Source of the DNA: Paramoeba atlantica
Taxonomy: Eukaryota > Protista > Discosea
Length of the DNA: 64,000 nucleotides
Assembly: GCA_977017575.1 (NCBI GenBank)
Contig: CDRNVI010000008.1
Coordinates: 62,001-126,000, forward strand
Direction: 5' to 3'
A model generated the notes under the pieces. The model was not told the origin of the DNA. It ran no database searches and saw only the letters and a program-made list of their open reading frames with translations. Shown one piece after another: positions 360 to 61,209 of the stretch. The number at the start of each line of letters is the position of its first letter. Positions within the stretch are counted from its first letter, which is position 1. The translations under genes and the position numbers were made by a program.

Positions 360-617
360 GGCAAGGGAGTGTTGTAAAACGAAAGAGGCTAAGGAAAATC
401 TCATGTATGCTACGTGATACAAGGGAAATTTAAAAAACAGATTTGAAGTCGATAAGTAACAATACATGTACGTTTTGTAAATTATTCGTTGTTCCATTTC
501 TTTGCGTGGTTTCCTTTCTTTAAGTAGTAAAAAAATCCCCTTTATCTCATCTTTCACACCTTATTTCCCTTCATAAAATTATATTTCCTTTCTCTCCCCT
601 CCCCTCCTCCTCCTCTT

Positions 618-1958
618 ATGTCCACCGCTAAACTCGTCGACCTTGAAGACTTCGAGGACGACCAGCAGATCGTCCCCCCCTCCCTCCCCCTCTCCTCCGA
701 CGGCCCCTCCGTCCCTGCCCCCTCCTACGCCGTCGCGCTCGGCGGGTTCAAGGACTTTTGTTTAAAGCCCGAACTCACCCGGGCCATCGCCGAGAACGGT
801 TTCGAGCACCCCAGTGAGGTCCAGCACAAGGCCTTGCCTCAGGCTCTCCTCGGGAATGACATTTTAGCCCAGGCGAAATCCGGGATGGGCAAAACCGCGG
901 TGTTTGTGTTTGCGCTGCTGGAACACATTGAAAAGCCCCCTGCGGATTCCGATAAGTATGTGCAAGCCTTGGTGCTGGTCCACACCCGGGAGTTGGCGTA
1001 CCAAATCGATCATGAGTTTACGCGGTTTAACCGAGCCCTGCCGCACTGTACCACCTGTGTGGTGTTTGGGGGGGTACCGGAGGAGGAGAACGCGAAGCTG
1101 TTTAAGGACAAGAAGAAGACCCCGTTGATTGTGGTCGGGACTCCGGGACGGACCCTGGCGCTCGCGACGAGGCTGAAAGTGATGGATTTGAATCATGTGA
1201 AGTATTTTGTGTTGGATGAGTTTGATCGGTGTTTGGAGGATCTTTCGATGCGTGCGGATGTGCAGGCGATTTTTATGAAGACTCCAAAGACGAAACAGGT
1301 GATGATGTTCTCGGCGACAATGTCGGAGGAGATGCGTAACCTCGCAAAAAAGTTTATGAACAACCCGTTGGAGATTTATGTCGATCAGCAGAGTAAACTC
1401 ACGTTGCATGGTTTGCTGCAGTATTATGTGAGTTTGGAGGAGAAGGTCAAGGCACGGAAGCTGCTGGATATTCTCGATGCCGTCGACTTCCATCAGTGTA
1501 TTATCTTTGTCAACAGCGTGATGCGCTGCGAGGCTCTAAGCACGCTGTTGAAAAAATGCGCTTTTCCCTGTGTCGCGGTGCACGGCCAAATGGAGCAAAT
1601 CGAGCGATTGAAGACTTACGATCAGTGTAAGGCGCAGAGCTCTAAAATTGTCGTCGCAACGGATCTGTTCGGCCGTGGAATTGATATTAATCGGGTGAAC
1701 TTGGTGATTCAATATGACATGGCGCACGATGCGGATACATATCTGCACCGCGTGGGGCGTGCCGGTCGGTTTGGGAACAAGGGTTTGACGATTTGTTTCA
1801 TTACTGACACAATGCACCGCACGAAGGTGGACTCCGGGGAGTGGAAGTCTGTGGAGGATAAGGATGTGTTGAAGGATGTACAGTCCCGGTTTGAGATTCA
1901 GATGGCGGAGCTTACCGATCTCGCGACCTTGGACAAAGGGAAGTACATGTTGTCTTAG
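618..1958 (+). CDS. SUB2: ATP-dependent RNA helicase SUB2/UAP56 (DDX39 family)
   Basis: Motifs GFEHPSEVQ, AKSGMGKT, HTRELAYQI, VLDEFD, MMFSAT, LTLHGLLQYY, ATDLFGRGID, YLHRVGRAGRFG. Confidence 0.93.
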   Translation: MSTAKLVDLEDFEDDQQIVPPSLPLSSDGPSVPAPSYAVALGGFKDFCLKPELTRAIAENGFEHPSEVQHKALPQALLGNDILAQAKSGMGKTAVFVFALLEHIEKPPADSDKYVQALVLVHTRELAYQIDHEFTRFNRALPHCTTCVVFGGVPEEENAKLFKDKKKTPLIVVGTPGRTLALATRLKVMDLNHVKYFVLDEFDRCLEDLSMRADVQAIFMKTPKTKQVMMFSATMSEEMRNLAKKFMNNPLEIYVDQQSKLTLHGLLQYYVSLEEKVKARKLLDILDAVDFHQCIIFVNSVMRCEALSTLLKKCAFPCVAVHGQMEQIERLKTYDQCKAQSSKIVVATDLFGRGIDINRVNLVIQYDMAHDADTYLHRVGRAGRFGNKGLTICFITDTMHRTKVDSGEWKSVEDKDVLKDVQSRFEIQMAELTDLATLDKGKYMLS

Positions 1959-2359
1959 TTAAAGCAAAAAGCGGGTCTGCGGTATTTTTAAAAGTGGGTC
2001 TTTAATTTGCATATGAGTTGTAAGGTCAAATTAGGAACGATAGAAAAGCTTTAGCCATACGATTTCAAGCCACACGGTGTTCAAATTTTACAACGTAAAA
2101 TCTACATCACTTCGAAAACATTGGCTGTCTCATTTTTTTATGTCTTTGATTTTGAAAAAGATTATTCACTCAAATCAAATCAAGGTTGGATAGCCGTTAG
2201 TAGAGGAATCTTGATTGTATTAAAAGTGGAAAGTATCTTCATACACTGAACTTTGTTTTCGCTAGTTGTAACTGCTTGAAACAAAATCATATGCACTAAT
2301 TTTGTTTTTCAAACCTATCCTATATTTTTTCTAGAACGCCTATCGTTTCGCAAACACCA

Positions 2360-17003: not shown

Positions 17004-17036
<33 letters not shown>

Positions 17037-18160: not shown

Positions 18161-18185
18161 GGGCTCGCGCGACCAGGAGGGGAAG

Positions 18186-18256: not shown

Positions 18257-18291
18257 AGGACAGAAGTGCGAGGGCTTTAATTTCAATGGTT

Positions 18292-22290: not shown

Positions 22291-22583
22291 ATACTTCATG
22301 CTTTTCTTCCTGATTTCAATGAGTCCCCATTCCATGATGAAATTCACATCACTAATCACACAGATCGAGTCTTTCACTCACATGATTGCTTAACGTCATA
22401 GTTACACTGATATGGTATACCAAGAGCGACTGTTAGATCTTTTGATAATCATTTTTTCATATCAGCTGAGGATCTTAGATTTTCACACATGCTAATTTAT
22501 CATCCTTCAACACTTTTTCGCAAAACCTTTGGAATTCTCCATATTAATAATTTACATCGACAACTAAATTTTTGGTATCATCC

Positions 22584-23510
22584 ATGACGTCTCGATCGCA
22601 AAACCAAACATATGTTCAAGATCGAACGTTTCTCAACGCTGACCACAGCATGCGAGAGCCAACAGATACCCGAACTAGCAGTTCTAGACAGAGCACTGTA
22701 ACTCCTACTAGCTCTCTTCTTTCCTCCAAACTTACCGACGCAATCCAAACCCTCGTCAACGCAACACCTGACTCTACCACAACCAGCTCCTCTGAGCATG
22801 TCAACCGACTTTCTACCCTTATCGAAGCCCAACTGAACACCATTACCCCTGAACTCTCCATCGGACGTGGAAGCTGTGTCACAGACGCAACGAACAACGA
22901 CAATGACAACGTTGGGTTGGATTCCACCTCCTTGGCTGCTTCCTCCTTCTCCTCTACCACCCCAATTCCTGGAGTTTCCGTTCTTCCCTGGCGTGATCCG
23001 TTTGAGGGGGAGGACACCTCTGGCCCTACCCCCCATGGCGAGAGTCTTCCCTCCCACCCACGTTACGCCTACGACCCGAGCACCATGTGGCCTTCGGGCT
23101 CCGACGTCCATCTCTTCACGACTACAGGGGGAACTCGTAACACCCATCGTGTTCCCGAGCCCCTTGATAAAAGGGAGGAGGCGGGGGAACGGGAGACAAG
23201 GCACGAGGGGGGAGAAAACTCTCCCCCAGGTCGTGAGTTCTCTGTGTCTGCACGGCAGAAATCGACACAAGGTCGTACGGTGTACTCCGCACGGTCCCAT
23301 TCCCGTTCCCACCCCCGGGAGGGGGAGTATGGGCTCACGCCCGGGGAGGGGGGAGGGGGGGTAGCAGCAGCCATGGAGGGGGAGAGTCCTCCCGGGGACC
23401 TCCTTTCTACGCTGTCTAGCCCCCCAGAGGAGTTTCTTTCTCCACTTGGGGTGTCTCCGATTATGGTGCATACCGCGGAGAAAATTGCAAGGAGGGAGGG
23501 AAGGGGGTAG
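22584..23510 (+). CDS. Hypothetical Ser/Thr/Pro/Gly-rich disordered protein
   Basis: 308-codon ORF from ATG 22584 on the cluster strand; no recognisable domain. Confidence 0.45.
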   Translation: MTSRSQNQTYVQDRTFLNADHSMREPTDTRTSSSRQSTVTPTSSLLSSKLTDAIQTLVNATPDSTTTSSSEHVNRLSTLIEAQLNTITPELSIGRGSCVTDATNNDNDNVGLDSTSLAASSFSSTTPIPGVSVLPWRDPFEGEDTSGPTPHGESLPSHPRYAYDPSTMWPSGSDVHLFTTTGGTRNTHRVPEPLDKREEAGERETRHEGGENSPPGREFSVSARQKSTQGRTVYSARSHSRSHPREGEYGLTPGEGGGGVAAAMEGESPPGDLLSTLSSPPEEFLSPLGVSPIMVHTAEKIARREGRG

Positions 23511-23740
23511 GAAATTGGTGTGGGAGGGGTTTGCCCGCCCATTCGGGGAAGTTTGATAAAAGTGCACAATACATGTTTTGGTTTTTTATTTTTTAAAAGA
23601 GAGTGGAAATATGTCGTTTCGTGTGTTTTCACACGGTTTGTGAACGTGTAGAAATGATTTAAGGGTTGACGTTATTCATGTATGAAACTGGCTTTAACGG
23701 ATGAGGAATTTGATATTTTTCATATCGAATACGTAAATAA

Positions 23741-25999
23741 ATGTTGCAGCGCACAATTAAACATGTGGCTCGACACATGCGAAAATTGAATTTCTCGGAG
23801 AGGCCGAATCGTCCTCGAGAGGATCGGTCTCATACGTCAAACAGAGAATTCTCTCGTTCAAAGCAAAACGCTGGCACCGGAAAGGCAAGGTCGCCCAACA
23901 AAAACCAAGCCGATCATGAGTTCATGTCTCGTCCTCTTTCATCCACTTACCTTAAACGCGCTTCTCCTTACACCAGAACGGAGGATGGAGGAGCCATACG
24001 AGACATTCCACTTACCTACGAGCCGTACGAAAAGGAAAAGTACATGCGATTCGACCATCCACTGCGTCGATGTCCCTCCGAGGAGTCACGCAATGTGCCA
24101 CTGGACATCGAAGAGGACAACGTTTTCTCCAACGAAAAAGCGGAGGATTTTCGTGAGCCGGACCCCCAAGTCAAGCCTCTTCAGGCGAAATCCAGTCGCC
24201 GTAAAGCCCGACAGCAACATAGCACAGAGCAACGAGACTCGGCTAAAAAACGACTACAGGACTTAGTTCAAAAACCAGCGTACGCATCCCAGGCAGTGGA
24301 GCGCAGAGCGCAATCTCAAAAGCTTGCGGAGGACGTGATGTGGCCCGGCACCGTACTCCGTGACCCCTACGGTCATGTCATTCAGCACCTCGCCACCCTC
24401 AACGGAAACCCTGGATACCGCAACCGGCGGCGTACCTTTGTAGTCACCGGGAGGAGAGTGATTGAGGATATTGCCAACCGCATGAAAATCTTTCCGGAAT
24501 TACTTGTGGTGGATGCCAAGAAGCCGCTTCCGGCGATTTCAAAAAAGGAAATGAGTGGGGAAATCGTGAAGGCAACGGCCCGAGCGATGAGAACCATAGA
24601 CCCCGGCCACGATGGCTACATTGGGGAATACAATATCCCACCCTGCGCTCCAAAAGAGCTTTTGTTTGCCTCCCCTCGACAAATGACCAACTGGATAGTC
24701 CTGGATAACATTGCGGATCCCGGCACCCTTGGAAATCTACTCCGTACTGCTACTGCATTTGCTTACGATGCGGTTGTGATGACAAATCACTGTGCTGACT
24801 TTTTCGATAACCGGACGGTACGTGCGGCCCGTGGGGTTCATTTTCAGAAACTCACCCAATTTATAGTTCTCAAAGAAGAGGATGGGGATGACACCAGTGA
24901 GTTATTAAACCAAATGCTAGAGCACCACCATGCACAGCCTTGGGTATACAGCCCCACATTTGACTCGAAAACTGCAGAATTGCTTCGTGCATCCTCTTTA
25001 CCGGATGACCCAACAAAATCACACTCCCCACCTTCTTCCTCTGACATCCTGCAACCCCCCACGCGTCCTCTTCCCGTCGCCACACTCTCCGAGGTTCGTC
25101 AAACCATGGTCCAGCGCGACCTCCTTCTCTCCAACCCCAACCCCCCCTCCCCCCTGCATCACCCCCACCCCTCCCCCCTCCACCCCACCCGGCACATCCC
25201 CTGTCTCGCCTCCAGCAACGCCCTCTTCCTCGGCGACGACAAAGCCCAAACCCTCCTCCCTAAACTCTCCACCCGACTACGCACCCCACCCACACGCATC
25301 ACCCTGCTCGAGGAACCCCTCCCTTTTACTTTTACCTCTTCTTCTTCTTATTCTTCTACTCCTTCTTCCCCCCACCATGACCCACCCCCCCTCGAGCCCC
25401 TCCCCCTCCTCCCCGCCGCCGCCATCCTCCTCTACAACATGCGGCACACCCACAAGTGGGAACGGCTCAACCCCACCGAGGCCGCCGCCCTGTCCCCCAC
25501 GACCCCGTCGGCGGCTGAGGCCCAGCGTGCCTTCATGCCCCCCGGCCCGCTGGGGACCCCGGAGCCCAACCTCGTGGGGGGGGTCGAGGTGCGGGGGCTG
25601 TATGAGGGGATCCAGGCCGCGCGGGTGGGGCGGCGGCTGGGGCGGTGGGCGCGTGGGGATGAGGAGAGGTGGGAGGACGGGGAGGTGGCACGGATACGGC
25701 AGGGGGCGGTGCGGCATAGGGCGTGGATGGAGGGGGCGGTGGGGGGGGAGGGGATGCAGAGCGGGGAGGGGGGAGGAGAGGATGCAGAGGGGGTAAAGGA
25801 GGGGGAGGGGGGAGGGGATCCGTATGGGTATGAGGTAGAGGGGAAACGATCGGGTGGGGATAAGGTGGGGTATCCGGATTATGTAAAGGATACGTTGCCA
25901 CGACCGTATAGTCGGGAGGATGTACGAGAGGATGCGATGAAAAGGATGACGTACCGCAGGCCTTCGGTCTATGGGAAACTTGTGGGAAATCGGAGGTGA
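23741..25999 (+). CDS. SpoU/TrmH (SPOUT) RNA methyltransferase-like protein, MRM3-like, probably mitochondrial
   Basis: FVVTGRRVI substrate-binding-like motif and WIVLDNIADPGTLGNLLRTATAF...DFFDNRTVRAARG (SPOUT motif 1). The C-terminal motifs are degenerate. Confidence 0.75.
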   Translation: MLQRTIKHVARHMRKLNFSERPNRPREDRSHTSNREFSRSKQNAGTGKARSPNKNQADHEFMSRPLSSTYLKRASPYTRTEDGGAIRDIPLTYEPYEKEKYMRFDHPLRRCPSEESRNVPLDIEEDNVFSNEKAEDFREPDPQVKPLQAKSSRRKARQQHSTEQRDSAKKRLQDLVQKPAYASQAVERRAQSQKLAEDVMWPGTVLRDPYGHVIQHLATLNGNPGYRNRRRTFVVTGRRVIEDIANRMKIFPELLVVDAKKPLPAISKKEMSGEIVKATARAMRTIDPGHDGYIGEYNIPPCAPKELLFASPRQMTNWIVLDNIADPGTLGNLLRTATAFAYDAVVMTNHCADFFDNRTVRAARGVHFQKLTQFIVLKEEDGDDTSELLNQMLEHHHAQPWVYSPTFDSKTAELLRASSLPDDPTKSHSPPSSSDILQPPTRPLPVATLSEVRQTMVQRDLLLSNPNPPSPLHHPHPSPLHPTRHIPCLASSNALFLGDDKAQTLLPKLSTRLRTPPTRITLLEEPLPFTFTSSSSYSSTPSSPHHDPPPLEPLPLLPAAAILLYNMRHTHKWERLNPTEAAALSPTTPSAAEAQRAFMPPGPLGTPEPNLVGGVEVRGLYEGIQAARVGRRLGRWARGDEERWEDGEVARIRQGAVRHRAWMEGAVGGEGMQSGEGGGEDAEGVKEGEGGGDPYGYEVEGKRSGGDKVGYPDYVKDTLPRPYSREDVREDAMKRMTYRRPSVYGKLVGNRR

Positions 26000-26139
26000 G
26001 GAAACTTGGTTGGGTGATTTTGTTGTTGTTTTCTTTTGCAAAGTTGTGTCTTGTACAAGGTAATAGATTTTAAAAGGATGCTGGTTTACTCCTATCTTCT
26101 GCAAAATTATACACGTGTTACATTTTTTTTTATTAACGT

Positions 26140-27204
26140 ATGGGTGAGGTACCTCGACCTAGCCTAGAAGGACTTCTAGATGCGAAGGCTCCGAAATGGA
26201 TTTTCGTCGGAGGCAAAGGAGGTGTTGGGAAGACAACGACAAGCTGTGCGCTCTCATGCCTCCTTGCGTGGACGCCGTTGCGCAACGAGGAAAGCAAAGA
26301 GTCGAGAAAACGGCGGGTTCTCATTATTTCCACCGATCCCGCTCACAACTTAAGCGATGCTTTTGGGCAGCCCTTTTCAAAGACTCCCACGGCTGTCAAG
26401 GGGTTGGAAAATTTACACGCGATTGAAATTGACCCCAGCGCACTTACGAAAGACAAGGATTACTTTGCGGATTGGCACTCCAAGGAGAACGACTCGGTGG
26501 ATTCCACCCAAGGTACTTTTCGTAATCTTTTCGGGGTTCTGCAAAATGCAGCCGCGTCGTTTCCTGGAATTGATGAGGTCACTGTTTTTGCGGAGTTAAT
26601 GCGAGAAGTCCAGCAGTTGAACTACGACACAGTTGTGTTTGACACGGCGCCTACCGGACACACCCTTCGTCTATTGGCGTTGCCCCATACATTAGCCGAC
26701 GCGCTAGACCGCCTGCTGGATTTGCAAGGCATGACTACATTATTAAATGCTGCTTCTCAGTTCATGGGAAATGCCACCGATATGAGCGCAGGCACTTTTA
26801 CGGAAAAGGTCCAGCACTGGCGGGGGCAAATCAAGGAGATCCAACAGCGGTTCACGAACCATGAGGAGACCACATTCGTGTGTGTTTGTATTCCGGAATT
26901 TTTGTCTGTGTACGAGACAGAGCGATTGATTCAAGAATTGGCAAAGTATGACATTGCGTGTGACCACGTGGTCGTGAACCAGCTTGTGCGAAGACCAAAA
27001 AACGAGTCACCGTGTCGTATGTGCGATGCGCGGGTACGCATACAGAGTAAGTACTTGGAAGAAATTACGGAATTGTATGAAGATTTTCACATAGTGCAAA
27101 TGCCGCTTATGTGTGATGAAGTTCGCGGAGTCGAGAGCTTAAGTCTTTTTGGCAAATACCTTCTCACTCCATACAACCCTGACCGTGACGGCTATCTTAT
27201 GTAG
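26140..27204 (+). CDS. GET3: ATPase GET3/ASNA1 (ArsA family)
   Basis: WIFVGGKGGVGKTT, ISTDPAHNLSDAF, FPGIDE, VFDTAPTGHTLRLL, IPEFLSVYETERL, CRMC. Confidence 0.96.
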   Translation: MGEVPRPSLEGLLDAKAPKWIFVGGKGGVGKTTTSCALSCLLAWTPLRNEESKESRKRRVLIISTDPAHNLSDAFGQPFSKTPTAVKGLENLHAIEIDPSALTKDKDYFADWHSKENDSVDSTQGTFRNLFGVLQNAAASFPGIDEVTVFAELMREVQQLNYDTVVFDTAPTGHTLRLLALPHTLADALDRLLDLQGMTTLLNAASQFMGNATDMSAGTFTEKVQHWRGQIKEIQQRFTNHEETTFVCVCIPEFLSVYETERLIQELAKYDIACDHVVVNQLVRRPKNESPCRMCDARVRIQSKYLEEITELYEDFHIVQMPLMCDEVRGVESLSLFGKYLLTPYNPDRDGYLM

Positions 27205-34800: not shown

Positions 34801-34941
34801 ACTAGCTTGGAGCCAACTATATCAGACGCAAATATCAGATTTAGTGCTCTGAGAGCTAAAGTACGCAAAAATGGCCCCATTTTTACCCAAAAATCGGCTA
34901 TTTTTGGCTATAATCTTTCCGTTTTCTTCAGCTTTCCTGGC

Positions 34942-35068
34942 CAAATTTTTTTTTTAGGCTCTTCGTTAAACGCGGTGGTAGTTTTCAACGCGAAGTGCGC
35001 AGCATGAGTGACTTCTAAGTGGAAAACGACCACCGCGTTTAACGAAGAGCCTAAAAAAGAAAATTTCA
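34942..35068. mobile_element. Short hairpin MITE, copy 2
   Basis: TTTTTAGGCTCTTCGTTAAACGCGGTGGT...ACCACCGCGTTTAACGAAGAGCCTAAAAA. Confidence 0.7.
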
Positions 35069-35527
35069 CGCCATTAATCGTCTTCAGAGGGCGCGTTGCC
35101 TAGGATTCCTAATGAAGTTCAATCGGCACTTTCTCCCATCAGCCTTTTTCCTCAGTAATGCAAGCACTGACTTCCCAAAATAAGACGCGCAAACCTGATA
35201 CAACCCAGGCAATCCATTTTAGCTGCAATTCCAATAAAACAGCGGATAAATTACAGATCTTTTCTCCCAAAAGAATTTAACCTCCTCCCTTATTTTCCTT
35301 AATAAAATGTACCAAAGAGGAAAAATTATGATCTTTATGATAGTTTTTCTTGTTTGGGGAACATTTTCATGTCTTTCATCCCAAAATCGGACCTCAACTC
35401 CCAATACCTTCTTTATCTCACAAAACCAAACACTGCTTTTTTTGAAAAGCAATTGTTTGAAAAAATTCATTTGAAAACATTTGTTTGTAAAAACACATTT
35501 CTTTGACCTCCCTTTTTTCTCTCCTCC

Positions 35528-36823
35528 ATGACCTTCTCCCGCACCCTCCTCCGCGCCCTCCCCTCCTCCCTCCCCTCCTCCCTCCCCCTCCGCACCCCCC
35601 ACCCCACCTCCACGCGCCACCTCTACTTCGACATGCAATCCACCACCCCCCTCGACCCCCGGGTCCTTGACGCCATGCTCCCCTACCTCACCGAGGCCTA
35701 CGGCAACCCCCACAGCCGTACCCACAGCTACGGCTGGGAGGCCGAGGAGGCCGTCGAAAAATCCCGCGCCCAGGTCGCGTCTCTCCTCGGGGCCTCCCCG
35801 AAGGAAATCTTCTTCACCTCCGGGGCCACCGAGGCCAACAACATTGCGCTCAAAGGGGTGGCCCAATTCTACAAAGTCAAAAACAAGAACCACCTCGTGA
35901 CGCTGCAGACCGAGCACAAGTGCGTGCTGGACTCCTGCCGCGCCCTGGAGCTCTCCGGGGGGTTCGAGGTGAGTTACCTCCCGGTGCAGCCCAACGGGCT
36001 GGTGGATTTAAAACTCCTTGAGGGCGCGCTACGGGAGAGCACCGCGCTGGTCTCGGTGATGACCGTGAACAATGAGATCGGGGTAATTCAACCCGTGGAG
36101 GCCATTGGGGCGCTGTGCCGGGCGAGAGGGGTGTTCTTTCACACCGATGCGGCCCAGGCGGTGGGGAAGGTCCCCGTGGGGGTGGAGCGGATGCAGTGTG
36201 ATCTGCTGTCGCTGTCCGGGCATAAGGTGTATGGACCGAAAGGGGTGGGGGCGTTGTATTTGAGAAGGCGACCACGGGTACGGGTACGGTCACCGATCTC
36301 GGGAGGGGGACAGGAACGGGGGATACGGTCCGGGACGCTTCCTACGCCGTTGATTGTGGGGCTAGGGGCGGCGTGTGAGGTAGCGGCGCAGGAGATGGGA
36401 AGGGATAAGGACCATATTGAGGGACTGGCGTCGTATCTGTGGGAGGAGCTGCAGAAAAGGGTGCCGAAGGTTACGTTGAATGGGGATGCGGTCTCAAGGT
36501 ATTGGGGAAATGTGAATGTGAGTTTTGCCGGGGTCGAGGGGGAGAGTCTGTTGATGGGCCTGGGGAATGTCGCGATCTCGTCTGGTAGTGCGTGCACGAG
36601 TGCGTCGCTGGAGCCGAGTTATGTGTTGCGGGCACTGGGGATTTCCTCCGAGAATGCGCACACCTCGCTACGGTTTGGGATTGGCCGTTTTACTACGAAG
36701 GCGGAGGTTGATTTCGTGTTGGATAGGTGCACGGAGGAGGTTCGACGGTTGCGGTCGATGTCCCCGTTGTGGGACTTGATTGAGTCAGGGGTAGATTTGT
36801 CTGCCATCCAGTGGCGGAGGTAA
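35528..36823 (+). CDS. NFS1: Mitochondrial cysteine desulfurase
   Basis: LYFDMQSTTP, YGNPHSRTHSYGW, FTSGATEANN, SLSGHKVYGPKGVG (PLP lysine), SSGSACTSASLEPSYVL. Confidence 0.97.
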   Translation: MTFSRTLLRALPSSLPSSLPLRTPHPTSTRHLYFDMQSTTPLDPRVLDAMLPYLTEAYGNPHSRTHSYGWEAEEAVEKSRAQVASLLGASPKEIFFTSGATEANNIALKGVAQFYKVKNKNHLVTLQTEHKCVLDSCRALELSGGFEVSYLPVQPNGLVDLKLLEGALRESTALVSVMTVNNEIGVIQPVEAIGALCRARGVFFHTDAAQAVGKVPVGVERMQCDLLSLSGHKVYGPKGVGALYLRRRPRVRVRSPISGGGQERGIRSGTLPTPLIVGLGAACEVAAQEMGRDKDHIEGLASYLWEELQKRVPKVTLNGDAVSRYWGNVNVSFAGVEGESLLMGLGNVAISSGSACTSASLEPSYVLRALGISSENAHTSLRFGIGRFTTKAEVDFVLDRCTEEVRRLRSMSPLWDLIESGVDLSAIQWRR

Positions 36824-36942
36824 AAAGGGGGAAAAGAGGACGTACATGTTGCTGGTTAGTTTTCTTTTTGGGCAAGTTTATTTTGGTTAAAACATTTTTT
36901 CTTTCTGGAATTCTCTATGTACATACATAACGCACCATGTGT

Positions 36943-37001
36943 GATTTCTAGGCCGAACGATAAATTATCGTTCGGCCTAGAAATCTTCCTTCAAGGAAGA
37001 T
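36943..37001. repeat. Perfect 21-bp-arm palindrome with an overlapping 9-bp-arm palindrome
   Basis: GATTTCTAGGCCGAACGATAA-A-TTATCGTTCGGCCTAGAAATC, then ATCTTCCTT-C-AAGGAAGAT. Confidence 0.9.
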
Positions 37002-37215
37002 AGACCCTATTATTATAATAGGGTAAATGTTGGATTGTGTAGCAGTGAGAGCGCGGGATTGATAGTGATGTGTTATACTGATTTGTTATACAGATGTACG
37101 TTCGCGAGTTCTTCATTTGCATATCATGAAGACGTTATTTTTTATCTGCTTTCAACCAGTACGAGCTTCTTTGTTGCTTCCTATACCTGATCTCTCTTTT
37201 ATTCCTCACTTTCTA

Positions 37216-37536
37216 ATGCGAGCCTTTTCTCTGCTTTCTCTCCTTGTCGTCGCCATGCTTGGCTTTCAGTCGACTCGCGTCCAAGCGTTTGACAAATCCA
37301 TTCGTCGTATCTTTGGGGGTTCCTCCACGGAGGAGACCAAGGAACCGGCTACCACAAAGCCCGAGCCCGAAACAAAGCCCGAGCCCCCGAAAGAGAAACC
37401 CGCGGCACCCACCACGGAGCCCACAGAGGGTGACGGTGAGAAGTCGGCCGAGTCCTCCGCCCTCTCGATGCAATGGGGAACGGCCAGCGCGCTGGCTAGC
37501 GTAGTTTCGCTCTCTTTGGTCATTCTGGCGGCGTAA
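37216..37536 (+). CDS. Small secreted, probably GPI-anchored, Pro/Glu/Thr/Lys-rich surface protein, copy 1
   Basis: MRAFSLLSLLVVAMLG signal peptide; TKPEPETKPEPPKEKP stalk; SAESSA small-residue site; hydrophobic C-terminal tail. Confidence 0.8.
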   Translation: MRAFSLLSLLVVAMLGFQSTRVQAFDKSIRRIFGGSSTEETKEPATTKPEPETKPEPPKEKPAAPTTEPTEGDGEKSAESSALSMQWGTASALASVVSLSLVILAA

Positions 37537-52735: not shown

Positions 52736-53406
52736 TGTGTGTATGTGTGTGTGTCTTCCACGCTGAGAAAAGTACGAGACGTTTAGAAAAGATCGGAATA
52801 CAAAGTATAGCACACAGCTAAAGATTCAGAATTATTTTATGAGATCCTATTATGGAAAAGACAGTTGCTACACATACTTGAATTCAAAAACTGGTTTTTT
52901 ACGAATTATCTTTTTGGTGGGCCTGTTATTTCTAGTCATTTTTAGAGACAGATATTGCAATTTTCTGGTTATTTGTTTGTAATTTGATCTATTGATATTT
53001 TTGTTACATTGTTATAACAATTTTATAATAAAGCATCTGCTAAATTCCTTATTCAACTCCCATACACAAGGCAAACTACGTTTCATAAAATTGATCTTTG
53101 AGAAGTGTTTCGAACATTCATCCAATCGCTTTGGTACACCTTTTTTATATCTCTTTCTTCACACCAGGCTCCTAACAACAACAGCAAACTCAACTCTACC
53201 CTTCCTTATACAACCTTCATTCTCCTCTTTTCTTCCCTTTTCCCTTCCTCACCCCCTCCCCTCTTTCCCCCCCCCCACTCCCCCTACCCCCCCCCTACCC
53301 TCCTTTCTTTCTTTTCCTCTACCAAAACAAAAAAACAACTTTCACAAACCCTATCCCCCTTTACTCCTCTATCTCCCCTCTATCTCTTCCCCCCCCCCTC
53401 CCCCAT

Positions 53407-54693
53407 ATGAACACCGTAAAATCCCTCTCCCATCTCCTCGGCCTGGTCGCCCCCCCTACCACTACCAACACGACCCCCACCCCCCACACCCTCCCCCCCT
53501 CTCCCGTCTCCTCCCCCCCCTCCCCCCTCTCCCGTCTCCTCTCCCCCCACACCCCCCTCCCCCTCCGTCACCACATCACCGTCGCGCGGTGGCACACCGA
53601 CACCCGACCCCCGCTCCATCTCGTGCTCCTCCCCCCGCTGTACGCCACAGGGGGGGGGTTCTACGGGGGGGTGGGCGCAGCGGCGTGTGGGATGCCCGCA
53701 GCGGGGGGAGGGGGAGGGGGAGGGGGGATAGGGGGAGGGGGGGTCGTGAGCCCGCGGTACCCGCTCCATCTCCACGCGGTGGATGTGCGGGATCATGGGA
53801 TGACGGGGGATAGGGGGGTAAAGGGGGTGGGGGATGAAACGGGGGTTTCGTCGTCGTCTTCGTCTTGTTCTACTTCTGGTTTTAGTGTCGCAGCGGCGTG
53901 TGTGGATGTGTTGGGTTTTCTGTCGGGTCCTGTGTTTGGGGGTTCGCCGGTGTATTTGGTGGGGTATGGTGTGGGTGGGGTGATTGCGTCGGCGGTGGCG
54001 ATGGCTGCCCCGCATGGGGTGCGAGGGGTGACGGTGATCAATGCGAATGTGGTGCGCCCGGGGAGTGTGGGGCTCTCGCCGGCGGCGAAATATTTTCTGA
54101 GGTTGGGGAGAAAGGAGGGGGAGGTGGCGGAAATGCTGGCCGGGGGAAGCGTTCCTTCGTCAGATGAGTTGAATGCTCAAGCGGATAAAAGATTGAAAGA
54201 GTGTGGGAGTTTTGATAAAATGAATGAGGAATTGCGTGAAGTATTTCCGGATCGGAAAGAGCGTATGGTAATGTTGTCCAATATTAAGGAAACAAACGGG
54301 GAGTTGGCGTGGAAGATGAATGTTGGAAATATTACAAGATTCGCCGTAACAGACTTTTTAGCTAATGAAAAGTCGGGAGAGGGGACACGTACTACAGAAA
54401 ATGGCAAGAAAATTGATGATGAACTATCGGTGGGATCATTGCTACTGAACGCTTCAAAAAAGAGCAATGTGCCTTTCCATTGGATACGAGATCAAGATGG
54501 GGGCTTTGAGTCTCGCAATGCGCTGGAAAACTTTTTTTCTGATGCAAAAGTTGAAGATTGGACCAATTTTGGAGGTGCTGACGCAACACATCGTCTTTTA
54601 CTCCCACGCGCAGCCGATGTTTTGCATTCTGTCCTGAACCGCTTTGATTTGCTGAGCGTAGAGGAAAAGGATGACGATGTCGCAGACAAATAG
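53407..54693 (+). CDS. Divergent alpha/beta-hydrolase fold protein (ABHD11-like), nucleophile apparently lost
   Basis: HLVLLPPLY, LHAVDVRDHG (compare DLRNHG), VYLVGYGVGG at the GxSxG elbow position, LAWKMNV. Confidence 0.6.
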   Translation: MNTVKSLSHLLGLVAPPTTTNTTPTPHTLPPSPVSSPPSPLSRLLSPHTPLPLRHHITVARWHTDTRPPLHLVLLPPLYATGGGFYGGVGAAACGMPAAGGGGGGGGIGGGGVVSPRYPLHLHAVDVRDHGMTGDRGVKGVGDETGVSSSSSSCSTSGFSVAAACVDVLGFLSGPVFGGSPVYLVGYGVGGVIASAVAMAAPHGVRGVTVINANVVRPGSVGLSPAAKYFLRLGRKEGEVAEMLAGGSVPSSDELNAQADKRLKECGSFDKMNEELREVFPDRKERMVMLSNIKETNGELAWKMNVGNITRFAVTDFLANEKSGEGTRTTENGKKIDDELSVGSLLLNASKKSNVPFHWIRDQDGGFESRNALENFFSDAKVEDWTNFGGADATHRLLLPRAADVLHSVLNRFDLLSVEEKDDDVADK

Positions 54694-57900: not shown

Positions 57901-59500
57901 CTCCCCCCGCGACACGCAAGAGATGGAGGAGATGGACGTCCTGTCTCGTATTCTACAAGAGCAAGATTTGGATCTCCGTGACAACAGCTCCGAGGACGAG
58001 TCTCAAGGAGGCGCAATGGAAAGTTCCACCATCGAAAGTGCACTCGACACCGCTACCTTTTCTCACTCAAGCAGCATCGGCTCGGAGAGGTCACATTCCG
58101 CTCACCTTGGTTCCACCACCGAGGCCGCCACCTCGGAACAAAACCGATCCAAATCCGTATCCCCCGAAATCGTATCAACCCTCCCCCCGCAACCCTACCC
58201 CCCCGGACCCGCTCTCGACCCCTCCTGGCCCACCACCGCACCCAACAGCCACGGCTCCACCTCCCACCTCCGTCCCTCCTCCTCATCCTCTGCCGGGAGC
58301 AGCCCCGTGATCCCCGCGCTTACCCAGCCCCCCTCCCACCGTACCCCCTCCCCTGCGCTCTCCCCCTCCCCGGCCTCCAGAGCCTCCTCTCTTCGCCATC
58401 TCCTGCTTCGTCACGTGCGGTACCAAAACGCTGCCACGATACTGAAAGAGATTGCAGAAGAGACCCCCTGGCGGGGAAGCGAATTTCACACAATCCAACA
58501 CAATCCACGAAATCGGATAGAGGAAGAGATGACCATGACGAGACCTCCAACCCGGTCGTGTTCAAATACGGAAGAGACCAATTCGGTTTCTTCTCCTGGA
58601 CTCGTCCAACATCCGTTTACCCCTACCCTTGAGGTTTTACGCTCCCGTAACGCGTTAAAGCCCTACATGGTGTTACTACAAAAAGCGACGGCACGGCAGG
58701 ACATGTCCTCCGCGGTGAAGGATCTGATCCCTGCGCTACGAAGGCTACGGACAGCAGCAAGGAGTGAGGATTTAACCCCCGCGACCCCACGAAAAGGGCG
58801 GGAGCCTCACCCGGGGGAGTTGGCCACACAATCTCCACAAAGTGCGTATGATGGAAAGGATTATGGGGGGGGAAGGTTTTCAAGAAGAGATTGCGGTCGT
58901 GTGGAGAACTCACCACGTTCGCGAAGTACAACACGGGTCCGGTTTCACTCTCCCAGTCCGGTGAAGGGGAGTTGGGTTGCCGCTGAGTTAGCCTCCCGTC
59001 GTCCAGTCTCGAGGATACGGTCAACCAGTTTAATGCGCGGACCGGGGTCAAATGATGTCATACGTCAAGCCTGTGCGGTGCAACATGTAGACACAACGCT
59101 ACGGGAACTCTCCCCAAGTGGGAAAATGGTTTCTTCGGTAGCTCGGGAGGTAGACTCGAAGGGGTTGTCTCATCCGTATTCTGTTCTGGCACAGTCGGGA
59201 CGACACAGGTCTGTGTCCAGTCCCCCACGCGTGCGACATCGTAGCGCACAGGAGATGAGAGAAGCACAGGACCAACTAGAAGGGGAGGAGGTGGCAATGA
59301 ATGCACCACTGACACAACCCAGTCCTAGCCGATTGCCCCGGATGGTCCCGAAGGAGCCTCATGAGTTGTTAGGTCCTACAGCGTTTCCCGCGCGTCCTCC
59401 GGTGCTGCAGGGAAGTGGGCCGAAATCGGTGTTACCGGGTGGCACACGTGAGACGTTTCCGAATCCCGTGCGCCAGATGCGGTTTAGTGACGTATTGTAG
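54923..59500 (+). CDS. Large hypothetical protein with helical N-terminal two-thirds and Ser/Pro/Arg-rich disordered C-terminus
   Basis: About 1525 uninterrupted codons from ATG 54923. Confidence 0.8.
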   Translation: MAASPNEVVELSHCISNWKERYLTQLREIASGAALSSLVETDYEESLPQHIRVYWPIIPFEKNPVVQSAVELCLRTTPRVQQVSFGVAFASGTLLTEISSPKAMQFVSEDAAGSLFSSLSGITKARQRIFRSQVWSAVLLRVMAEQSSAADEFLGTIFQNTLLGLPFKINESSPSSGNRANSMDEFLTSNLTISDGAADRGEHFLVRLQSNVAFDATLHLLKVMHSTAPKNIRLNLLFSRLEESLVELYNKHSPTGNKIPIVQLKRLLTVKTHLLPSLRLPTLQRVVEEDLQKSLRKLRRLHPQESRHAHRTPHFYESELQSCVLALGQHTLDHDSILLLSPLFLKHRVKAHIARSFLQGALFEAIHARASRMTTTEAKWLGSMLLYHACQGGSSLRETAYVCLRDLACLISSRDSTLEDGAALDTSTSSHLFHFLGPRLFKTPEGVALLTRSLADGSVDGRMLSSVTQALTAKEWRALIWDAIYEGKGRSLHFLQKFYRSTACPQDVIPLLESEDGDFVSNWVNEIKERLFDEDVELSRGVESAHSILLGCVHSVSFASAALGTLFTVQNSDLMKTYLSNLSDFMLNGIRQCRSAGIVQIFLDLVFASIFRTTLQKQITWTRFLTNIIINSECATEQCVAAIGTLMSEQALSSEVCSSLDVYQCVLQLLSTPSVGPHVQLFHALRGSTQDADMRPLLGLAFTYCVPRMGMDYLSVYADKIFEGLSLPTITRVSKAQDTLNSLGSYGMDPNAMGTFFVWFEKHLAKINERESTASNAWIVSIRDASNAWAQCCIAASIYRPNLRTSLVQLMRRELTEAHSHIDQKPDAYACMAYVTCQIFIQLFLFVRRSQPARLDLPLQEDIQEILYILHNHQGSLEQLPAPHSARSALLSRGTLSILESLIDTDDTVDVADSVSSASIIATEILANVERGTHSDYWMVEHYGSMAERIKSKQYSIETEKETDASLSGEKRSLSTNAQELFQFDPRATRVFPSPRDTQEMEEMDVLSRILQEQDLDLRDNSSEDESQGGAMESSTIESALDTATFSHSSSIGSERSHSAHLGSTTEAATSEQNRSKSVSPEIVSTLPPQPYPPGPALDPSWPTTAPNSHGSTSHLRPSSSSSAGSSPVIPALTQPPSHRTPSPALSPSPASRASSLRHLLLRHVRYQNAATILKEIAEETPWRGSEFHTIQHNPRNRIEEEMTMTRPPTRSCSNTEETNSVSSPGLVQHPFTPTLEVLRSRNALKPYMVLLQKATARQDMSSAVKDLIPALRRLRTAARSEDLTPATPRKGREPHPGELATQSPQSAYDGKDYGGGRFSRRDCGRVENSPRSRSTTRVRFHSPSPVKGSWVAAELASRRPVSRIRSTSLMRGPGSNDVIRQACAVQHVDTTLRELSPSGKMVSSVAREVDSKGLSHPYSVLAQSGRHRSVSSPPRVRHRSAQEMREAQDQLEGEEVAMNAPLTQPSPSRLPRMVPKEPHELLGPTAFPARPPVLQGSGPKSVLPGGTRETFPNPVRQMRFSDVL

Positions 59501-59934
59501 TAGAGTGTACTTTTTTTGTGCACATTTTTTATTCCGTTTAAATTGTTGATATTTCGGTGGATAGGTACTATCTTGTGGGTATACACCATGCGTTTTGATA
59601 GTTTCAATGTAGATTTTGCAATAAATTCTCTTCTGGTTTTAGTACAGTGTTGTACAATGTAGCAGGTATTTCGTTTCTTACAAATTGAGAAAACGAAATG
59701 TCACGGAAGTTTAGACAATTTAGTATGCGCCATACGCTTTGTTCATAACGTACTAGAAGTTTCACTCGAAACTTTTTAGATTTCAACAACTTTAACATCT
59801 TCACAATTTTAACATCTGGTATCATACACGTATTTCTTATTTTCTATACATATTAATCTATCCTTGTTAAAACCTTCTGTTCTCCTGTTATATCACATTT
59901 CTATTATCCAATCTTTACTCAACTGCTACACCCC

Positions 59935-60720
59935 ATGTTTTGTCTACCACTTTCTCTTGCTCCTCGTTCCATATCCAAAGTAGCAGGAAAAATCCCGATA
60001 GCTACCGAGAAAGTCAAAGCGTTGTCTAAAACACCGAAAACATCCCCTAGCTCCAATAACCCAAGCTCGACCCCGATGCCCCATCCAGTAGATTTACGAC
60101 GACGACATCAAAACCTCTACGTCCCCGGGATGCACTCGTTTCTTCTCTCCGAGCACCATCTCACGCAAGAGGTAGCGCGGCAAGAGGAGGCATGGCGCCG
60201 CAGACTAAACATGGTCTACGATAAGGAGAATTTTCCACGCCCCACATGGAGTAAGTCCAGCACATATGATATCGAATTCTGCAAGCCCGCAACCATAGAA
60301 AAGGGCAATACCCCATTGGATGAAGCTCATCAAATCGAGTCGAATGTACGCACCAAAAAAGGTAAGAAGTCATCCCGAAATACCCAGCAGGTTTTGGAGA
60401 AAAAATCTCCATCTCCTCATGCAGGTTCGTTGAACACACAATTTTCAGCATCATCAAAACAAGATAAAAAAGAGTTTTGGGATCCACAAAGTGACTACTG
60501 GGGTATGCTGACCTCAGCCATCGCGGGTACCGTGGTGGGGTTCTACTTAGTCGACTGTGTTTTGGAGGGGAAGGAGGGGGTGCGGCTCCCCTATGACCCC
60601 GTTGTGGGGTTTCATCCCACGATACAGGAGCATGAGGGGAGGAGTGAGGCATACAACCAATTGGTGGAGCAGGATATAAGGGAGGGGATTGAAAAGTCGA
60701 AGGCAAAGGTGCTGTCATAG
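59935..60720 (+). CDS. Hypothetical protein with one predicted TM helix
   Basis: 261-aa ORF; hydrophobic segment YWGMLTSAIAGTVVGFYLV. Confidence 0.6.
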   Translation: MFCLPLSLAPRSISKVAGKIPIATEKVKALSKTPKTSPSSNNPSSTPMPHPVDLRRRHQNLYVPGMHSFLLSEHHLTQEVARQEEAWRRRLNMVYDKENFPRPTWSKSSTYDIEFCKPATIEKGNTPLDEAHQIESNVRTKKGKKSSRNTQQVLEKKSPSPHAGSLNTQFSASSKQDKKEFWDPQSDYWGMLTSAIAGTVVGFYLVDCVLEGKEGVRLPYDPVVGFHPTIQEHEGRSEAYNQLVEQDIREGIEKSKAKVLS

Positions 60721-60921
60721 AAATCAGATACATGTAGTCCATGCATTTTTATGGCACATAAACAGGTCGTGATCTTGAGTGCTTTGTGATGTACGCCCAA
60801 TGAAGCAACTTTGACATACATGTGCAATTTGTAATTGTGCCAAAGATTATTCGCTGAGATAAATTAAAGTTCATGGCTTAAATCTTGTTTTCCATGTTTT
60901 TCCTATGAAATCGGACACACT

Positions 60922-61209
60922 ATGTCCACTATAAAATGTCGATGTGGTACCGATTCCGAAGAGGCTCACAGAAAATGGGTGGCATGCGATATATGCGGAG
61001 TATGGATGCACGCAGACTGCATGGGAATTGTAACTGAAGAAGGATTTGAAACGATCAAGCATCGTCCATTTTATTGCGATCCATGTCGGTCATCTTTCGT
61101 AAAAGACAGAGAGGATGTCTCTGAAACTGTACGGATAATTTCTGAGGAATGCATACGATTTCGAAACTACTTGCTGAGGCAGAAATCAGTGTCCTCCAAA
61201 TCCGTTTAG
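60922..61209 (+). CDS. Small PHD-finger protein
   Basis: CRC...WVACDICGVWMHADC...FYCDPC gives the C4-H-C3 pattern. Confidence 0.85.
   Translation: MSTIKCRCGTDSEEAHRKWVACDICGVWMHADCMGIVTEEGFETIKHRPFYCDPCRSSFVKDREDVSETVRIISEECIRFRNYLLRQKSVSSKSV

What the first reader, a model, noticed from the sequence alone, without database searches (positions are those of the whole stretch)
35510..36830. Recurring strand-symmetric C-rich then G-rich domains inside coding genes (clearest case: NFS1)
Seen: in the conserved NFS1 gene the third codon position flips from C to G midway. Hand count gives 16/20 codons ending in C at 35642-35701, versus 12/20 ending in G and 1/20 in C at 36302-36361. The same polarity recurs at about 0.6-1.9, 22.7-23.5, 25.0-26.0, 53.2-54.2, 58.1-59.4 and 60.0-60.7 kb, while NSF, RRP12 and CysRS show no such pattern. 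C-then-G is unchanged by reverse-complementing, so it is not simple co-directional transcription bias. Inference: a fixed, bidirectional process centred at each switch point, such as replication origins, R-loop/G4 sites or recombination hotspots, has imprinted the genes. A selected mRNA foldback between the C and G halves is an alternative.
Basis: partly seen in the sequence, partly recalled or inferred. Interest (0 to 1): 0.82.

Follow-up and report, generated by a model that had tools for sequence, protein, structure and literature searches.

The report
Mirrored C-then-G composition islands inside genes
In this Perkinsela-like kinetoplastid, roughly 1-kb stretches inside genes have been rewritten, C-rich in the first half and G-rich in the second, by a strand-mirrored DNA-level substitution bias that overrides codon choice and even amino acids, and I found no published description of it.

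Summary
NFS1 (35528-36823, +) has GC3 0.78 against about 0.38 in its neighbours. Synonymous-codon permutation gives p<=0.003 for the C-to-G step in six genes, p=0.02 in a seventh, and nothing in NSF, CysRS or RRP12. GC-rich bipolar loci are C|G 5-7 times and G|C 0-1 times. Three independent samples hold the NFS1 island at 99.5-100% identity, so it is not an artefact.

The islands arose by substitution. Fourfold sites go to C, then to G, and amino-acid replacements follow the same direction. The arms are not specifically complementary in NFS1, so there is no selected foldback. A syntenic relative (L004) lacks the islands at the same genes, while two other relatives show a C-head/G-tail gradient on nearly every gene.

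The origin version fits poorly. I favour repair- or recombination-type biased substitution (about 0.4), with bidirectional Pol II initiation and R-loops as the main rival.

The scan noted this pattern on many other pieces of this genome; none had been followed up.

The parts
35528..36823 (+). NFS1 (mitochondrial cysteine desulfurase), intact and conserved; the whole coding sequence is an island
   Evidence: 431-aa ORF. Best hits are Perkinsela sp. CCAP 1560/4 at 77% and other kinetoplastids. Aligned with 6 orthologs. GC 0.62, GC3 0.78.
35500..35956 (.). C-arm of the NFS1 island. A weaker C>G skew continues upstream to about 35023 without any rise in GC.
   Evidence: 120-bp skew -0.80 to -0.04. 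Fourfold sites C 0.81, Y-sites C/(C+T) 1.00. The cumulative-skew minimum is at 35956. Minus-strand G4 motifs at 35556-35605.
35957..36830 (.). G-arm of the NFS1 island. A weaker G>C skew continues to about 37108.
   Evidence: Skew +0.14 to +0.54. Fourfold sites G 0.65, R-sites G/(A+G) 0.91, Y-sites C/(C+T) 0.21. Arm ends from cumulative skew.
492..2233 (.). Island over the DEAD-box helicase gene (618-1958), switch near 850-990
   Evidence: (p=0.001).
22572..23746 (.). Weaker island over the low-complexity ORF 22572-23510, switch near 23163
   Evidence: (p=0.003).
25000..26232 (.). Island over only the 3' third of the SpoU-like gene (23741-25999), with a sharp switch at about 25550-25573 from poly-C-rich to poly-G-rich sequence
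   Evidence: 500-bp skew -0.64 then +0.48 at GC 0.64-0.67. Sequence. p=0.001. This part aligns residue by residue with the ortholog P0121 of L004, 41% identity, E 3e-82.
53004..54150 (.). Island over the 5' flank and first ~250 codons of the alpha/beta-hydrolase-like gene (53407-54693), with a sharp switch at 53648. Weak G>C continues to 54761.
   Evidence: Skew -0.77 then up to +0.40. Sequence. p=0.001. Arms. G4 motifs by strand.
58000..59727 (.). Island over the 3' end of the 1544-aa ORF (54866-59500), switch near 58666
   Evidence: (p=0.001).
59728..61191 (.). Weak island over ORF 59935-60720, switch near 60460
   Evidence: (p=0.02).

Best explanation
The islands are footprints of a local, non-adaptive, strand-mirrored substitution bias towards G and C that acts on the DNA. 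On each side of a switch point, the strand that runs 5'->3' away from the switch has gained G, mainly from T and A and slightly from C. On the + strand this reads as a C-rich arm followed by a G-rich arm, each 0.4-0.65 kb at its core. Shown here: the change is by substitution, not insertion; it affects all codon positions and drives amino-acid replacements; it is lineage-specific at orthologous sites; and its strength grades across sister lineages from absent to nearly every gene. Inferred: the cause is repair-type DNA synthesis or mismatch correction around recurrent lesions. That would be a recombination-hotspot-like process combining GC-biased fixation with the strand asymmetry that break repair imposes. 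The breaks would lie either at the switch, with nascent outward strands gaining G, or in the nucleosome-poor spacers, with retained 3' tails gaining G as at human hotspots. Intergenic flanks keep their A+T content, presumably because of processing signals, so there only a G<->C swap is visible.
For: Fourfold sites pooled over five islands: C-arms A .07 C .66 G .15 T .13; G-arms A .16 C .15 G .56 T .12; background A .27 C .19 G .19 T .35 (per island). Window-specific amino-acid replacements in NFS1 shift positions 1-2 towards C in the C-arm and towards G in the G-arm (Mann-Whitney p=6e-4). Examples are the invariant K of GLKxVAISSG becoming G, and a presequence rebuilt from Pro/Ser/Leu/Thr. The SpoU-like island aligns residue by residue with its ortholog, with K/N/D/S replaced by P in the C-arm and by G/R/A/V in the G-arm. 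The orthologous DEAD, SpoU-like and NFS1 genes of the syntenic relative L004 have GC3 0.36-0.41 and no step. The clade forms a graded series: L004 none, L001 weak, L003, then L002 strong. The scale, about 0.5 kb per arm with nothing beyond about 1 kb, resembles resection or conversion tracts. Mirrored strand asymmetry, including A>G and C>G on the single-stranded side with translesion polymerases implicated, is documented around human meiotic breaks (PMC7615360). Perkinsela keeps Spo11, Dmc1 and Hop1 (PMC5601477). Islands can cover only part of a gene conserved as one unit, as recombination-driven GC islands do.
Against: If the break is at the switch, the polarity is the reverse of that at human hotspots, where the retained 3' tails gain G. 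If breaks are in the spacers, the inner arms of the three partial-gene islands are unexplained, and islands should flank a spacer on both sides, which is mostly not seen. The GC rise stops within about 60 bp of the start and stop codons while the flanks stay at GC about 0.35; a regional mutation or conversion bias should also enrich neutral flanks. T on the G-gaining strand must go to G, a transversion, rather than to C, which plain GC-biased conversion does not predict. There is no direct evidence of recombination, breaks or polymorphism spectra in this organism.
Confidence: 0.4

Rival explanations
1. The islands are bidirectional RNA polymerase II initiation regions, or R-loop-prone sites, embedded in coding sequence. 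A pair of divergent G-rich coding-strand elements would act like trypanosome GT-rich dispersed promoters or vertebrate GC-skewed CpG-island promoters. They would be kept by selection, or built by damage to the displaced non-template strand.
For: The polarity matches. In T. brucei start regions the 10-mers enriched on the coding strand are long runs of G or T, and synthetic 210- and 416-bp elements drive directional transcription and H2A.Z deposition (PMC5579346). A divergent pair of such elements therefore reads C/A-rich then G/T-rich. Arm size (0.4-0.65 kb), GC-richness against an AT-rich background and intensity peaking at the switch in the sharp islands resemble bidirectional CpG-island promoters (my own knowledge). 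G4 motifs sit on the strand that would be non-template for outward transcription.
Against: T is depleted, not enriched, on the G-rich strand. The islands lie inside coding sequences of a one-directional gene cluster, about one per 9 kb, so the leftward arm would drive antisense transcription into upstream genes. They are absent at orthologous genes of the syntenic L004. In L002 and L003 the switch would fall in the middle of nearly every gene. Function would not need about 1 kb of saturated composition or damaging amino-acid changes. The only RNA run is too thin to test initiation.
Confidence: 0.2
2. Each switch is a fixed replication origin and the skew is the imprint of leading/lagging-strand mutational asymmetry.
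For: C-then-G on the + strand is the classical origin polarity, an upward skew jump (my own knowledge). The pattern is strand-symmetric and recurs every few kb.
Against: The skew is confined to 1 kb or less per side, with no replicon-scale skew between islands. The amplitude, up to 0.8, far exceeds eukaryotic replicative skews. A/T asymmetry has the wrong sign for G+T leading-strand enrichment. At T. brucei origins plus-strand G4s lie upstream and minus-strand G4s downstream of the centre (PMC13179062), the reverse of the arrangement here, and those origins are mostly intergenic. L004 has no islands at orthologous sites. The gradient is phased to genes in L002 and L003.
Confidence: 0.1
3. Selection on the mRNA: codon optimisation towards GC3 combined with separating C (5') from G (3') to limit local structure, keeping the head free of G and AG, or forming a 5'-3' foldback.
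For: The GC rise is confined to coding sequence and stops at the start and stop codons, while the flanks only swap G for C. In L002 and L003 the gradient is phased to each gene, with the strongest skew in the UTR-like flanks. 5' flanks of island genes are almost free of G, 0.04 against 0.17, as a strong polypyrimidine tract would be.
Against: The arms of NFS1 are no more complementary than triplet shuffles, z=0.5. Islands cover only the 3' third or the 5' part of genes conserved as single units, which whole-mRNA selection does not predict. Conserved residues are replaced in the direction of the bias. The genes affected here and those named in other first-stage notes (MAP2K, AP-4 mu, RPC2, CSL4) are not an obvious high-expression set. 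A hairpin enclosing the start codon would hinder translation.
Confidence: 0.1
4. Assembly, base-calling or contamination artefact.
For: Homopolymer-rich sequence is error-prone, and gene callers split NFS1 and the SpoU-like gene here (P0036 of 284 aa; P0124 of 141 aa).
Against: The NFS1 island is held in contigs from three samples with 0, 9 and 5 differences. The reading frames are intact and align with orthologs along their whole length. The bias has codon periodicity.
Confidence: 0.01

Closest known systems
Divergent GT/G-rich RNA polymerase II transcription start regions of trypanosomatids (Wedel et al. 2017, PMC5579346)
   Same: Kinetoplastid context; coding-strand G-runs, so a divergent pair reads C-rich then G-rich; elements of a few hundred bp; no defined motif.
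   Different: Those lie at boundaries of transcription units, about one per 100 kb (the spacing is from my memory), not inside coding sequence every ~9 kb. They are G+T-rich, whereas here T is depleted. Initiation here is untested.
GC-skewed bidirectional CpG-island promoters and R-loops of vertebrates (Ginno et al. 2012/2013; listed as reference 47 in PMC6294496, otherwise from my own knowledge)
   Same: About 1-kb GC-rich island in AT-richer DNA, skew flipping from C to G at the centre, G on the outward non-template strand.
   Different: Those mark promoters and first exons and are tied to DNA methylation. Here there is no CpG excess (observed/expected 0.6-1.07), the islands are inside genes of a polycistronic array, and they are not conserved in a syntenic relative.
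Recombination-driven GC islands (GC-biased gene conversion; e.g. the Fxy gene of mouse and runaway GC in gerbils, PMC7403616 found by title only) and strand-asymmetric mutagenesis at meiotic breaks (Hinch et al. 2023, PMC7615360)
   Same: kb-scale, lineage-specific GC3 rise that can cover part of a gene and forces GC-rich-codon amino acids; mirrored strand asymmetry about a centre; N>G changes on one strand.
   Different: No published hotspot shows a compositional C|G flip of this amplitude. The polarity is opposite to the human one if the break is at the switch. The flanks are not GC-enriched.
Replication-origin skew jumps (bacteria, human N-domains; my own knowledge) and T. brucei nascent-strand origins (PMC13179062)
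   Same: Upward GC-skew jump, strand-symmetric.
   Different: The range is 1 kb or less rather than the replicon; the A/T asymmetry has the wrong sign; the G4 arrangement is reversed; the location is intragenic rather than intergenic.

Membership tests
Replication-origin skew jump | Skew of one sign persists across the replicon arm on each side of the jump | tested here: not met
   Outside the islands, 500-bp skew fluctuates around 0 (for example -0.07 to +0.05 on both sides of NFS1); the signal ends within about 1 kb.
Replication-origin skew jump | G and T are enriched together on the leading-sense strand | tested here: not met
   At fourfold sites T is the most depleted base on the G-gaining strand. 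A>T in G-arms and T>A in C-arms, Fisher p=5e-4.
Replication-origin skew jump | Initiation of DNA synthesis at the jump | not testable with these tools
   No nascent-strand or marker-frequency data. The G4 arrangement is the reverse of that at T. brucei origins.
Trypanosomatid GT-rich Pol II start region | G/T-run enrichment on the coding strand of the transcribed direction | tested here: inconclusive
   G-runs and G4 motifs lie on the outward strand in both arms, but T is depleted.
Trypanosomatid GT-rich Pol II start region | Location at the start of a polycistronic unit (strand-switch or head-to-tail boundary) | tested here: not met
   All switches lie inside coding sequences of one + strand gene array.
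Trypanosomatid GT-rich Pol II start region | Primary transcripts and H2A.Z at the site | not testable with these tools
   There is only one small RNA run, held as unstranded contigs.
GC-biased gene conversion hotspot island | Local W->S enrichment at synonymous and non-synonymous sites, with shifts towards GC-rich-codon amino acids | tested here: met
GC-biased gene conversion hotspot island | The same enrichment in adjacent non-coding DNA | tested here: not met
   Flanks of island genes have GC 0.35-0.36, as in other genes; only G and C are swapped. The same holds in L002.
GC-biased gene conversion hotspot island | Turnover between lineages | tested here: met
   No islands at orthologous genes in the syntenic L004.
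GC-biased gene conversion hotspot island | Raised recombination and a W->S fixation bias in polymorphism | not testable with these tools
   Only seven differences between strains fall in the island, and they cannot be polarised.
Selected mRNA foldback | Arm-to-arm complementarity beyond what composition gives | tested here: not met
   NFS1 z=0.5, DEAD 0.2, 1544-aa ORF 0.3. The excess in two islands comes from homopolymer-like runs.

The most novel reading that the evidence does not exclude
Prokinetoplastid nuclei harbour a previously undescribed, self-reinforcing, strand-specific mutational process that converts T, A and some C to G on one strand. Possible mechanisms include G-tract/G4-dependent error-prone synthesis, oxidised-dGTP misincorporation after loss of a sanitising enzyme, or excision of hydroxymethyl-U/base J followed by insertion of C opposite. 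The process would seed at points inside genes, grow outward as mirrored C|G islands, and in some lineages (L002, L003) take over nearly every gene, reshaping proteomes.
Probability: 0.3. Interest if true: 0.88.

Novelty: new variant of a known kind. Interest (0 to 1): 0.72.

Why it matters
If the islands mark sites of a recurrent DNA transaction, they give a sequence-only map, at a few hundred bp resolution, of where that transaction happens in an uncultivable endosymbiont. The transaction could be breaks, transcription initiation or replication initiation. In kinetoplastids the placement of all three is still debated. The islands also show a compositional force strong enough to replace invariant residues of an essential Fe-S enzyme and to turn unconstrained protein segments into Pro/Ser- or Gly/Arg-rich low complexity. 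Five sister lineages span the range from absent to pervasive, which makes a natural series for finding the responsible repair gene or life-history trait. In practice the islands split gene models, as happened to NFS1 and the SpoU-like gene, and they will bias codon-usage, dN/dS and phylogenetic analyses of these genomes.

Tried and rejected
1. Selected foldback or hairpin between the arms. Smith-Waterman scores against triplet shuffles give NFS1 z=0.5; an earlier version with duplex energies timed out.
2. Insertion of low-complexity DNA. Rejected because NFS1 and the C-terminus of the SpoU-like protein align residue by residue with orthologs of the same length.
3. The partial islands being separate genes fused by a lack of stop codons. 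Rejected for the SpoU-like gene, because ortholog P0121 (762 aa) matches residues 64-742 in one stretch.
4. Conserved position. Rejected by L004.
5. A shared motif at the switches. None is visible in +/-60 nt.
6. tRNA or Rfam RNA genes at or near the islands. None in the whole window.
7. Expression evidence. The only RNA run (17 Mb, contigs) covers NFS1 at depth about 6, like its neighbour, and cannot show transcript starts.
8. Counting all skew steps without a GC filter. Not discriminating, because each island creates two flanking down-steps and block shuffles give about 3 of each kind. With the GC filter the polarity is clear.
9. Extending the window along its contig through the DEAD-box protein. 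No gene with exactly that product is on record.
10. Literature. No paper combines Perkinsela with GC skew, and neither the Perkinsela genome paper nor the free-living prokinetoplastid paper mentions compositional skew.
11. A general trypanosomatid trait. The L. major NFS1 locus shows no gradient, and T. theileri shows only occasional weak ones.

Full report
**What the window is.** Nearly all long ORFs lie on the + strand, without introns and with short spacers. The ORF at 35528-36823 is a full-length mitochondrial-type cysteine desulfurase, NFS1. Its closest relatives are Perkinsela sp. CCAP 1560/4 (77%) and three unnamed assemblies (76-78%), followed by a free-living prokinetoplastid transcript and trypanosomatids. 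The window therefore comes from a Perkinsela-like (prokinetoplastid) nuclear genome with polycistronic gene arrays.

- NFS1 has GC 0.62 and GC3 0.78 in a window whose ordinary genes have GC3 0.33-0.45.
- By quarter, C3 is 0.76/0.37/0.05/0.16 and G3 is 0.17/0.46/0.64/0.53. In 120-bp windows the skew runs from -0.80 at the start codon to +0.54.
- I permuted synonymous codons among positions of the same amino acid. The upward step in G3-C3 is significant in NFS1, the DEAD-box gene, the SpoU-like gene, the abhydrolase and the 1544-aa ORF (p=0.001), in orf22k (p=0.003) and in ORF 59935 (p=0.02). It is not significant in 15 other genes, including NSF, RRP12 and CysRS.
- The significant downward steps are only the outer edges of islands.
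- With both arms required to have GC>=0.5, there are 5-7 C|G loci and 0-1 G|C loci. Shuffling 100-bp blocks gives about 0.8 of each.
- The one G|C locus is the spacer between a G-rich gene tail at the window start and the C-rich head of the DEAD-box gene.
- Contigs from three samples hold the NFS1 island at 99.5-100% identity, and the frames are intact. It is not an artefact.

**Anatomy.** Cumulative skew places the switches at about 850-990, 23163, 25573, 35956, 53648, 58666 and 60460. The GC-rich core arms are 0.4-0.65 kb.
- Four islands cover whole short genes: DEAD, orf22k, NFS1 and ORF 59935.
- Three cover only part of a long gene: the 3' third of the SpoU-like gene, the 5' flank plus the first ~250 codons of the abhydrolase, and the 3' end of the 1544-aa ORF.
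- The SpoU-like case is a true partial island. A 762-aa ortholog matches residues 64-742 in one stretch, and the island part aligns residue by residue at 41% identity.
- In the two sharpest islands, poly-C-rich sequence abuts poly-G-rich sequence directly.
- G4-type motifs lie on the minus strand in C-arms and on the plus strand in G-arms.
- The GC rise stops within tens of bases of the start and stop codons. A skew without any GC rise continues 100-500 bp into the flanks. In the 100 nt before island heads G is 0.04 (against 0.17) and C is 0.31 (against 0.16), with A+T unchanged.
- Beyond about 1 kb from a switch there is no skew.

**What changed.** Fourfold-degenerate sites, pooled over five islands:

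| Site set | A | C | G | T |
|---|---|---|---|---|
| C-arms | .07 | .66 | .15 | .13 |
| G-arms | .16 | .15 | .56 | .12 |
| Background genes | .27 | .19 | .19 | .35 |

- Seen from the strand that gains G, which is the strand running 5'->3' away from the switch in both arms, T is the most depleted base (0.25-0.35 of background). A comes next (0.38-0.60) and C least (0.75-0.82).
- The asymmetry is therefore purine/pyrimidine, not the G+T excess produced by cytosine deamination. The A/T difference between arms has p=5e-4.
- Two-fold sites agree. Pooling the per-island counts by hand, C/(C+T) rises to about 0.77 in C-arms (background 0.38), and G/(A+G) rises to about 0.79 in G-arms (background 0.41).
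- Positions 1 and 2 shift as well. Amino-acid replacements specific to this lineage's NFS1 move towards C in the C-arm and towards G in the G-arm (p=6e-4).
- These replacements include an otherwise invariant Lys becoming Gly and a presequence rebuilt from Pro/Ser/Leu/Thr codons.
- Unconstrained protein segments have become Pro/Ser/Thr/His-rich and then Gly/Glu/Arg/Val-rich.
- A force that overrides protein constraint points to mutation or fixation bias, not to selection on synonymous sites.

**Foldback test.** The C-arm and the reverse complement of the G-arm of NFS1 align no better than triplet-shuffled arms, z=0.5. The excess in two islands (z=2.9 and 6.5) comes from homopolymer-like runs.

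**Relatives.** I fetched the NFS1 loci of four related genomes and two trypanosomatids.
- L004 is syntenic with the window (RPL32, DEAD, kinase, NSF, SpoU-like, ArsA, NFS1, RRP12). It has the same low GC (0.405) but no islands. Its DEAD, SpoU-like and NFS1 genes have GC3 0.36-0.41 and no significant step. The islands are therefore not ancient fixed marks.
- In L002, and more weakly in L003, almost every gene regardless of length carries a C-head-to-G-tail gradient. Nine of ten L002 genes have a positive trend, and eight are significant.
- The L002 meta-gene skew runs from -0.46 just upstream of start codons, through -0.22 to +0.29 across the coding sequence, to +0.43 just after stop codons.
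- L002 fourfold sites are C .55/G .29 in gene heads and C .27/G .54 in tails, and the flanks again swap G and C at constant A+T.
- Perkinsela CCAP 1560/4 (L001) shows only a weak gradient.
- The L. major locus shows none, and the T. theileri locus shows occasional weak ones.
- The trait is thus a graded, lineage-variable property of this clade. In the window's lineage it appears as discrete, extreme islands.

**Mechanism.** What is shown is a DNA-level, substitution-driven change, mirrored about a point, directed towards G and C, of short range and lineage-specific. Which transaction causes it is inference.

I favour repair- or recombination-type biased substitution, for these reasons:
- It accounts for the kb scale and for the W->S change at all site classes.
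- It accounts for amino-acid shifts towards GC-rich codons and for islands that cover part of a gene.
- It accounts for turnover and graded strength among lineages.
- Mirrored strand asymmetry, including A>G and C>G on one strand, is documented around human meiotic breaks.
- Perkinsela keeps Spo11, Dmc1 and Hop1.

Its weak points:
- *Polarity.* Retained 3' tails gaining G gives G|C around a break. That fits breaks in the spacers, and so the L002 sawtooth and the whole-gene islands here, but it leaves the inner arms of the partial islands unexplained. A break at the switch needs the nascent outward strands to gain G.
- *Flanks.* The flanks show no GC rise.

The main rival is a bidirectional Pol II initiation or R-loop site. 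The polarity matches the coding-strand G/T runs of T. brucei start regions, whose 210-416-bp synthetic versions are functional. Against it, T is depleted here, the sites lie inside coding sequence of a one-directional array about every 9 kb, L004 lacks them, and L002 would need one in the middle of every gene.

The origin reading fits worst. The skew has short range, the A/T sign is wrong, the G4 arrangement is the reverse of that at T. brucei origins, and the gradient is phased to genes in relatives.

Selection on the mRNA would explain why the GC rise is limited to coding sequence. It does not explain the partial islands or the replacement of conserved residues.

**Unexplained.** Two features have no explanation: the sharp stop of the GC rise at coding-sequence ends while the skew continues into the flanks, and the fact that T on the G-gaining strand is lost to G rather than to C.

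**Novelty.** I found no paper combining Perkinsela with GC skew. Neither the Perkinsela genome paper nor the free-living prokinetoplastid paper mentions compositional skew. First-stage notes of this scan report the same C-to-G islands on many other pieces of this genome, none followed up. Those notes are leads, not support. One of them describes the flips as C/A-rich to G/T-rich; in this window the A/T component at fourfold sites is the other way round.

Noticed in passing
window 33600-35200, with a second copy of one element at 22167-22285: The 2.3-kb stretch without an ORF upstream of NFS1 is made of very high-copy repeats, with contig word depth up to about 700 times the single-copy level and many joints. 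It includes a 123-bp palindromic, MITE-like element at 34943-35065 with 47-nt inverted ends. The only other copy in the window lies 282 bp upstream of the orf22k island, and this one lies 460 bp upstream of the NFS1 island. That is a post-hoc coincidence of roughly p=0.003.
   Followed up: partly
window 37211-37535 and 45858-46181: A 325-bp repeat, 97% identical between its two copies. It encodes a ~106-aa protein (from the ATG at 37216) with a signal-like N-terminus, a Pro/Glu/Thr/Lys-rich middle (KPEPETKPEPPKEKP) and a hydrophobic, GPI-signal-like tail, resembling procyclin or mucin-type surface proteins. It has the highest RNA contig depth in the 6 kb examined (78 against about 6).
   Followed up: partly
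window 3960-6294: A minus-strand ORF (4690-5880, 396 aa) has an IS1595/ISXO2-like DDE transposase domain (PF12762, E 4e-14). It is bracketed by ~70-bp inverted repeats at 3960-4075 and 6209-6294. This looks like a DNA transposon sitting against the direction of the gene array.
   Followed up: partly
window 16447-17035: A ~590-bp purine-only (GAAA)n-like tract (GC skew 0.79, AT skew 0.81), followed by 96-140-bp and 19-bp tandem repeats up to 21.5 kb. This forms a 5-kb stretch of mostly repeats with no ORF of 200 aa or more after 17095.
   Followed up: no
window 41483-41760: A 25-bp minisatellite (TATCTTCCCCGGGCACAAGTCCCGA, 11 copies). It accounts for the C-rich, GC-rich patch at 41.4-42.2 kb and for the spurious minus-strand ORF there. 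It is not an island.
   Followed up: yes
window 36943-36985: A perfect 21-nt palindrome (GATTTCTAGGCCGAACGATAA / TTATCGTTCGGCCTAGAAATC) 120 bp downstream of the NFS1 stop codon. Many other short palindromic elements sit in the spacers (22 pairs found).
   Followed up: no
window 35528-36823 and 23741-25999: Public gene calls for this contig truncate both island genes: NFS1 is called as 284 aa (P0036) and the SpoU-like tail as a separate 141-aa product (P0124). The composition islands appear to break gene prediction.
   Followed up: partly
window 53950-53975 (abhydrolase, G-arm): The position expected for the nucleophile elbow G-x-S-x-G reads G-Y-G-V-G. The catalytic Ser may therefore have been replaced by Gly under the G pressure. 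I did not check this by alignment with homologs.
   Followed up: no
It is not significant in the codon permutation (p=0.38).
   Followed up: partly
L005 (Trypanosoma theileri NFS1 locus) 2205-2870, 5818-6348, 17592-18956: Some T. theileri genes have GC-richer, C-skewed heads followed by G-skew (one gene rho=+0.23, p=6e-7), on a background of G>C on the coding strand. This may be a faint form of the same tendency outside the prokinetoplastids.
   Followed up: partly
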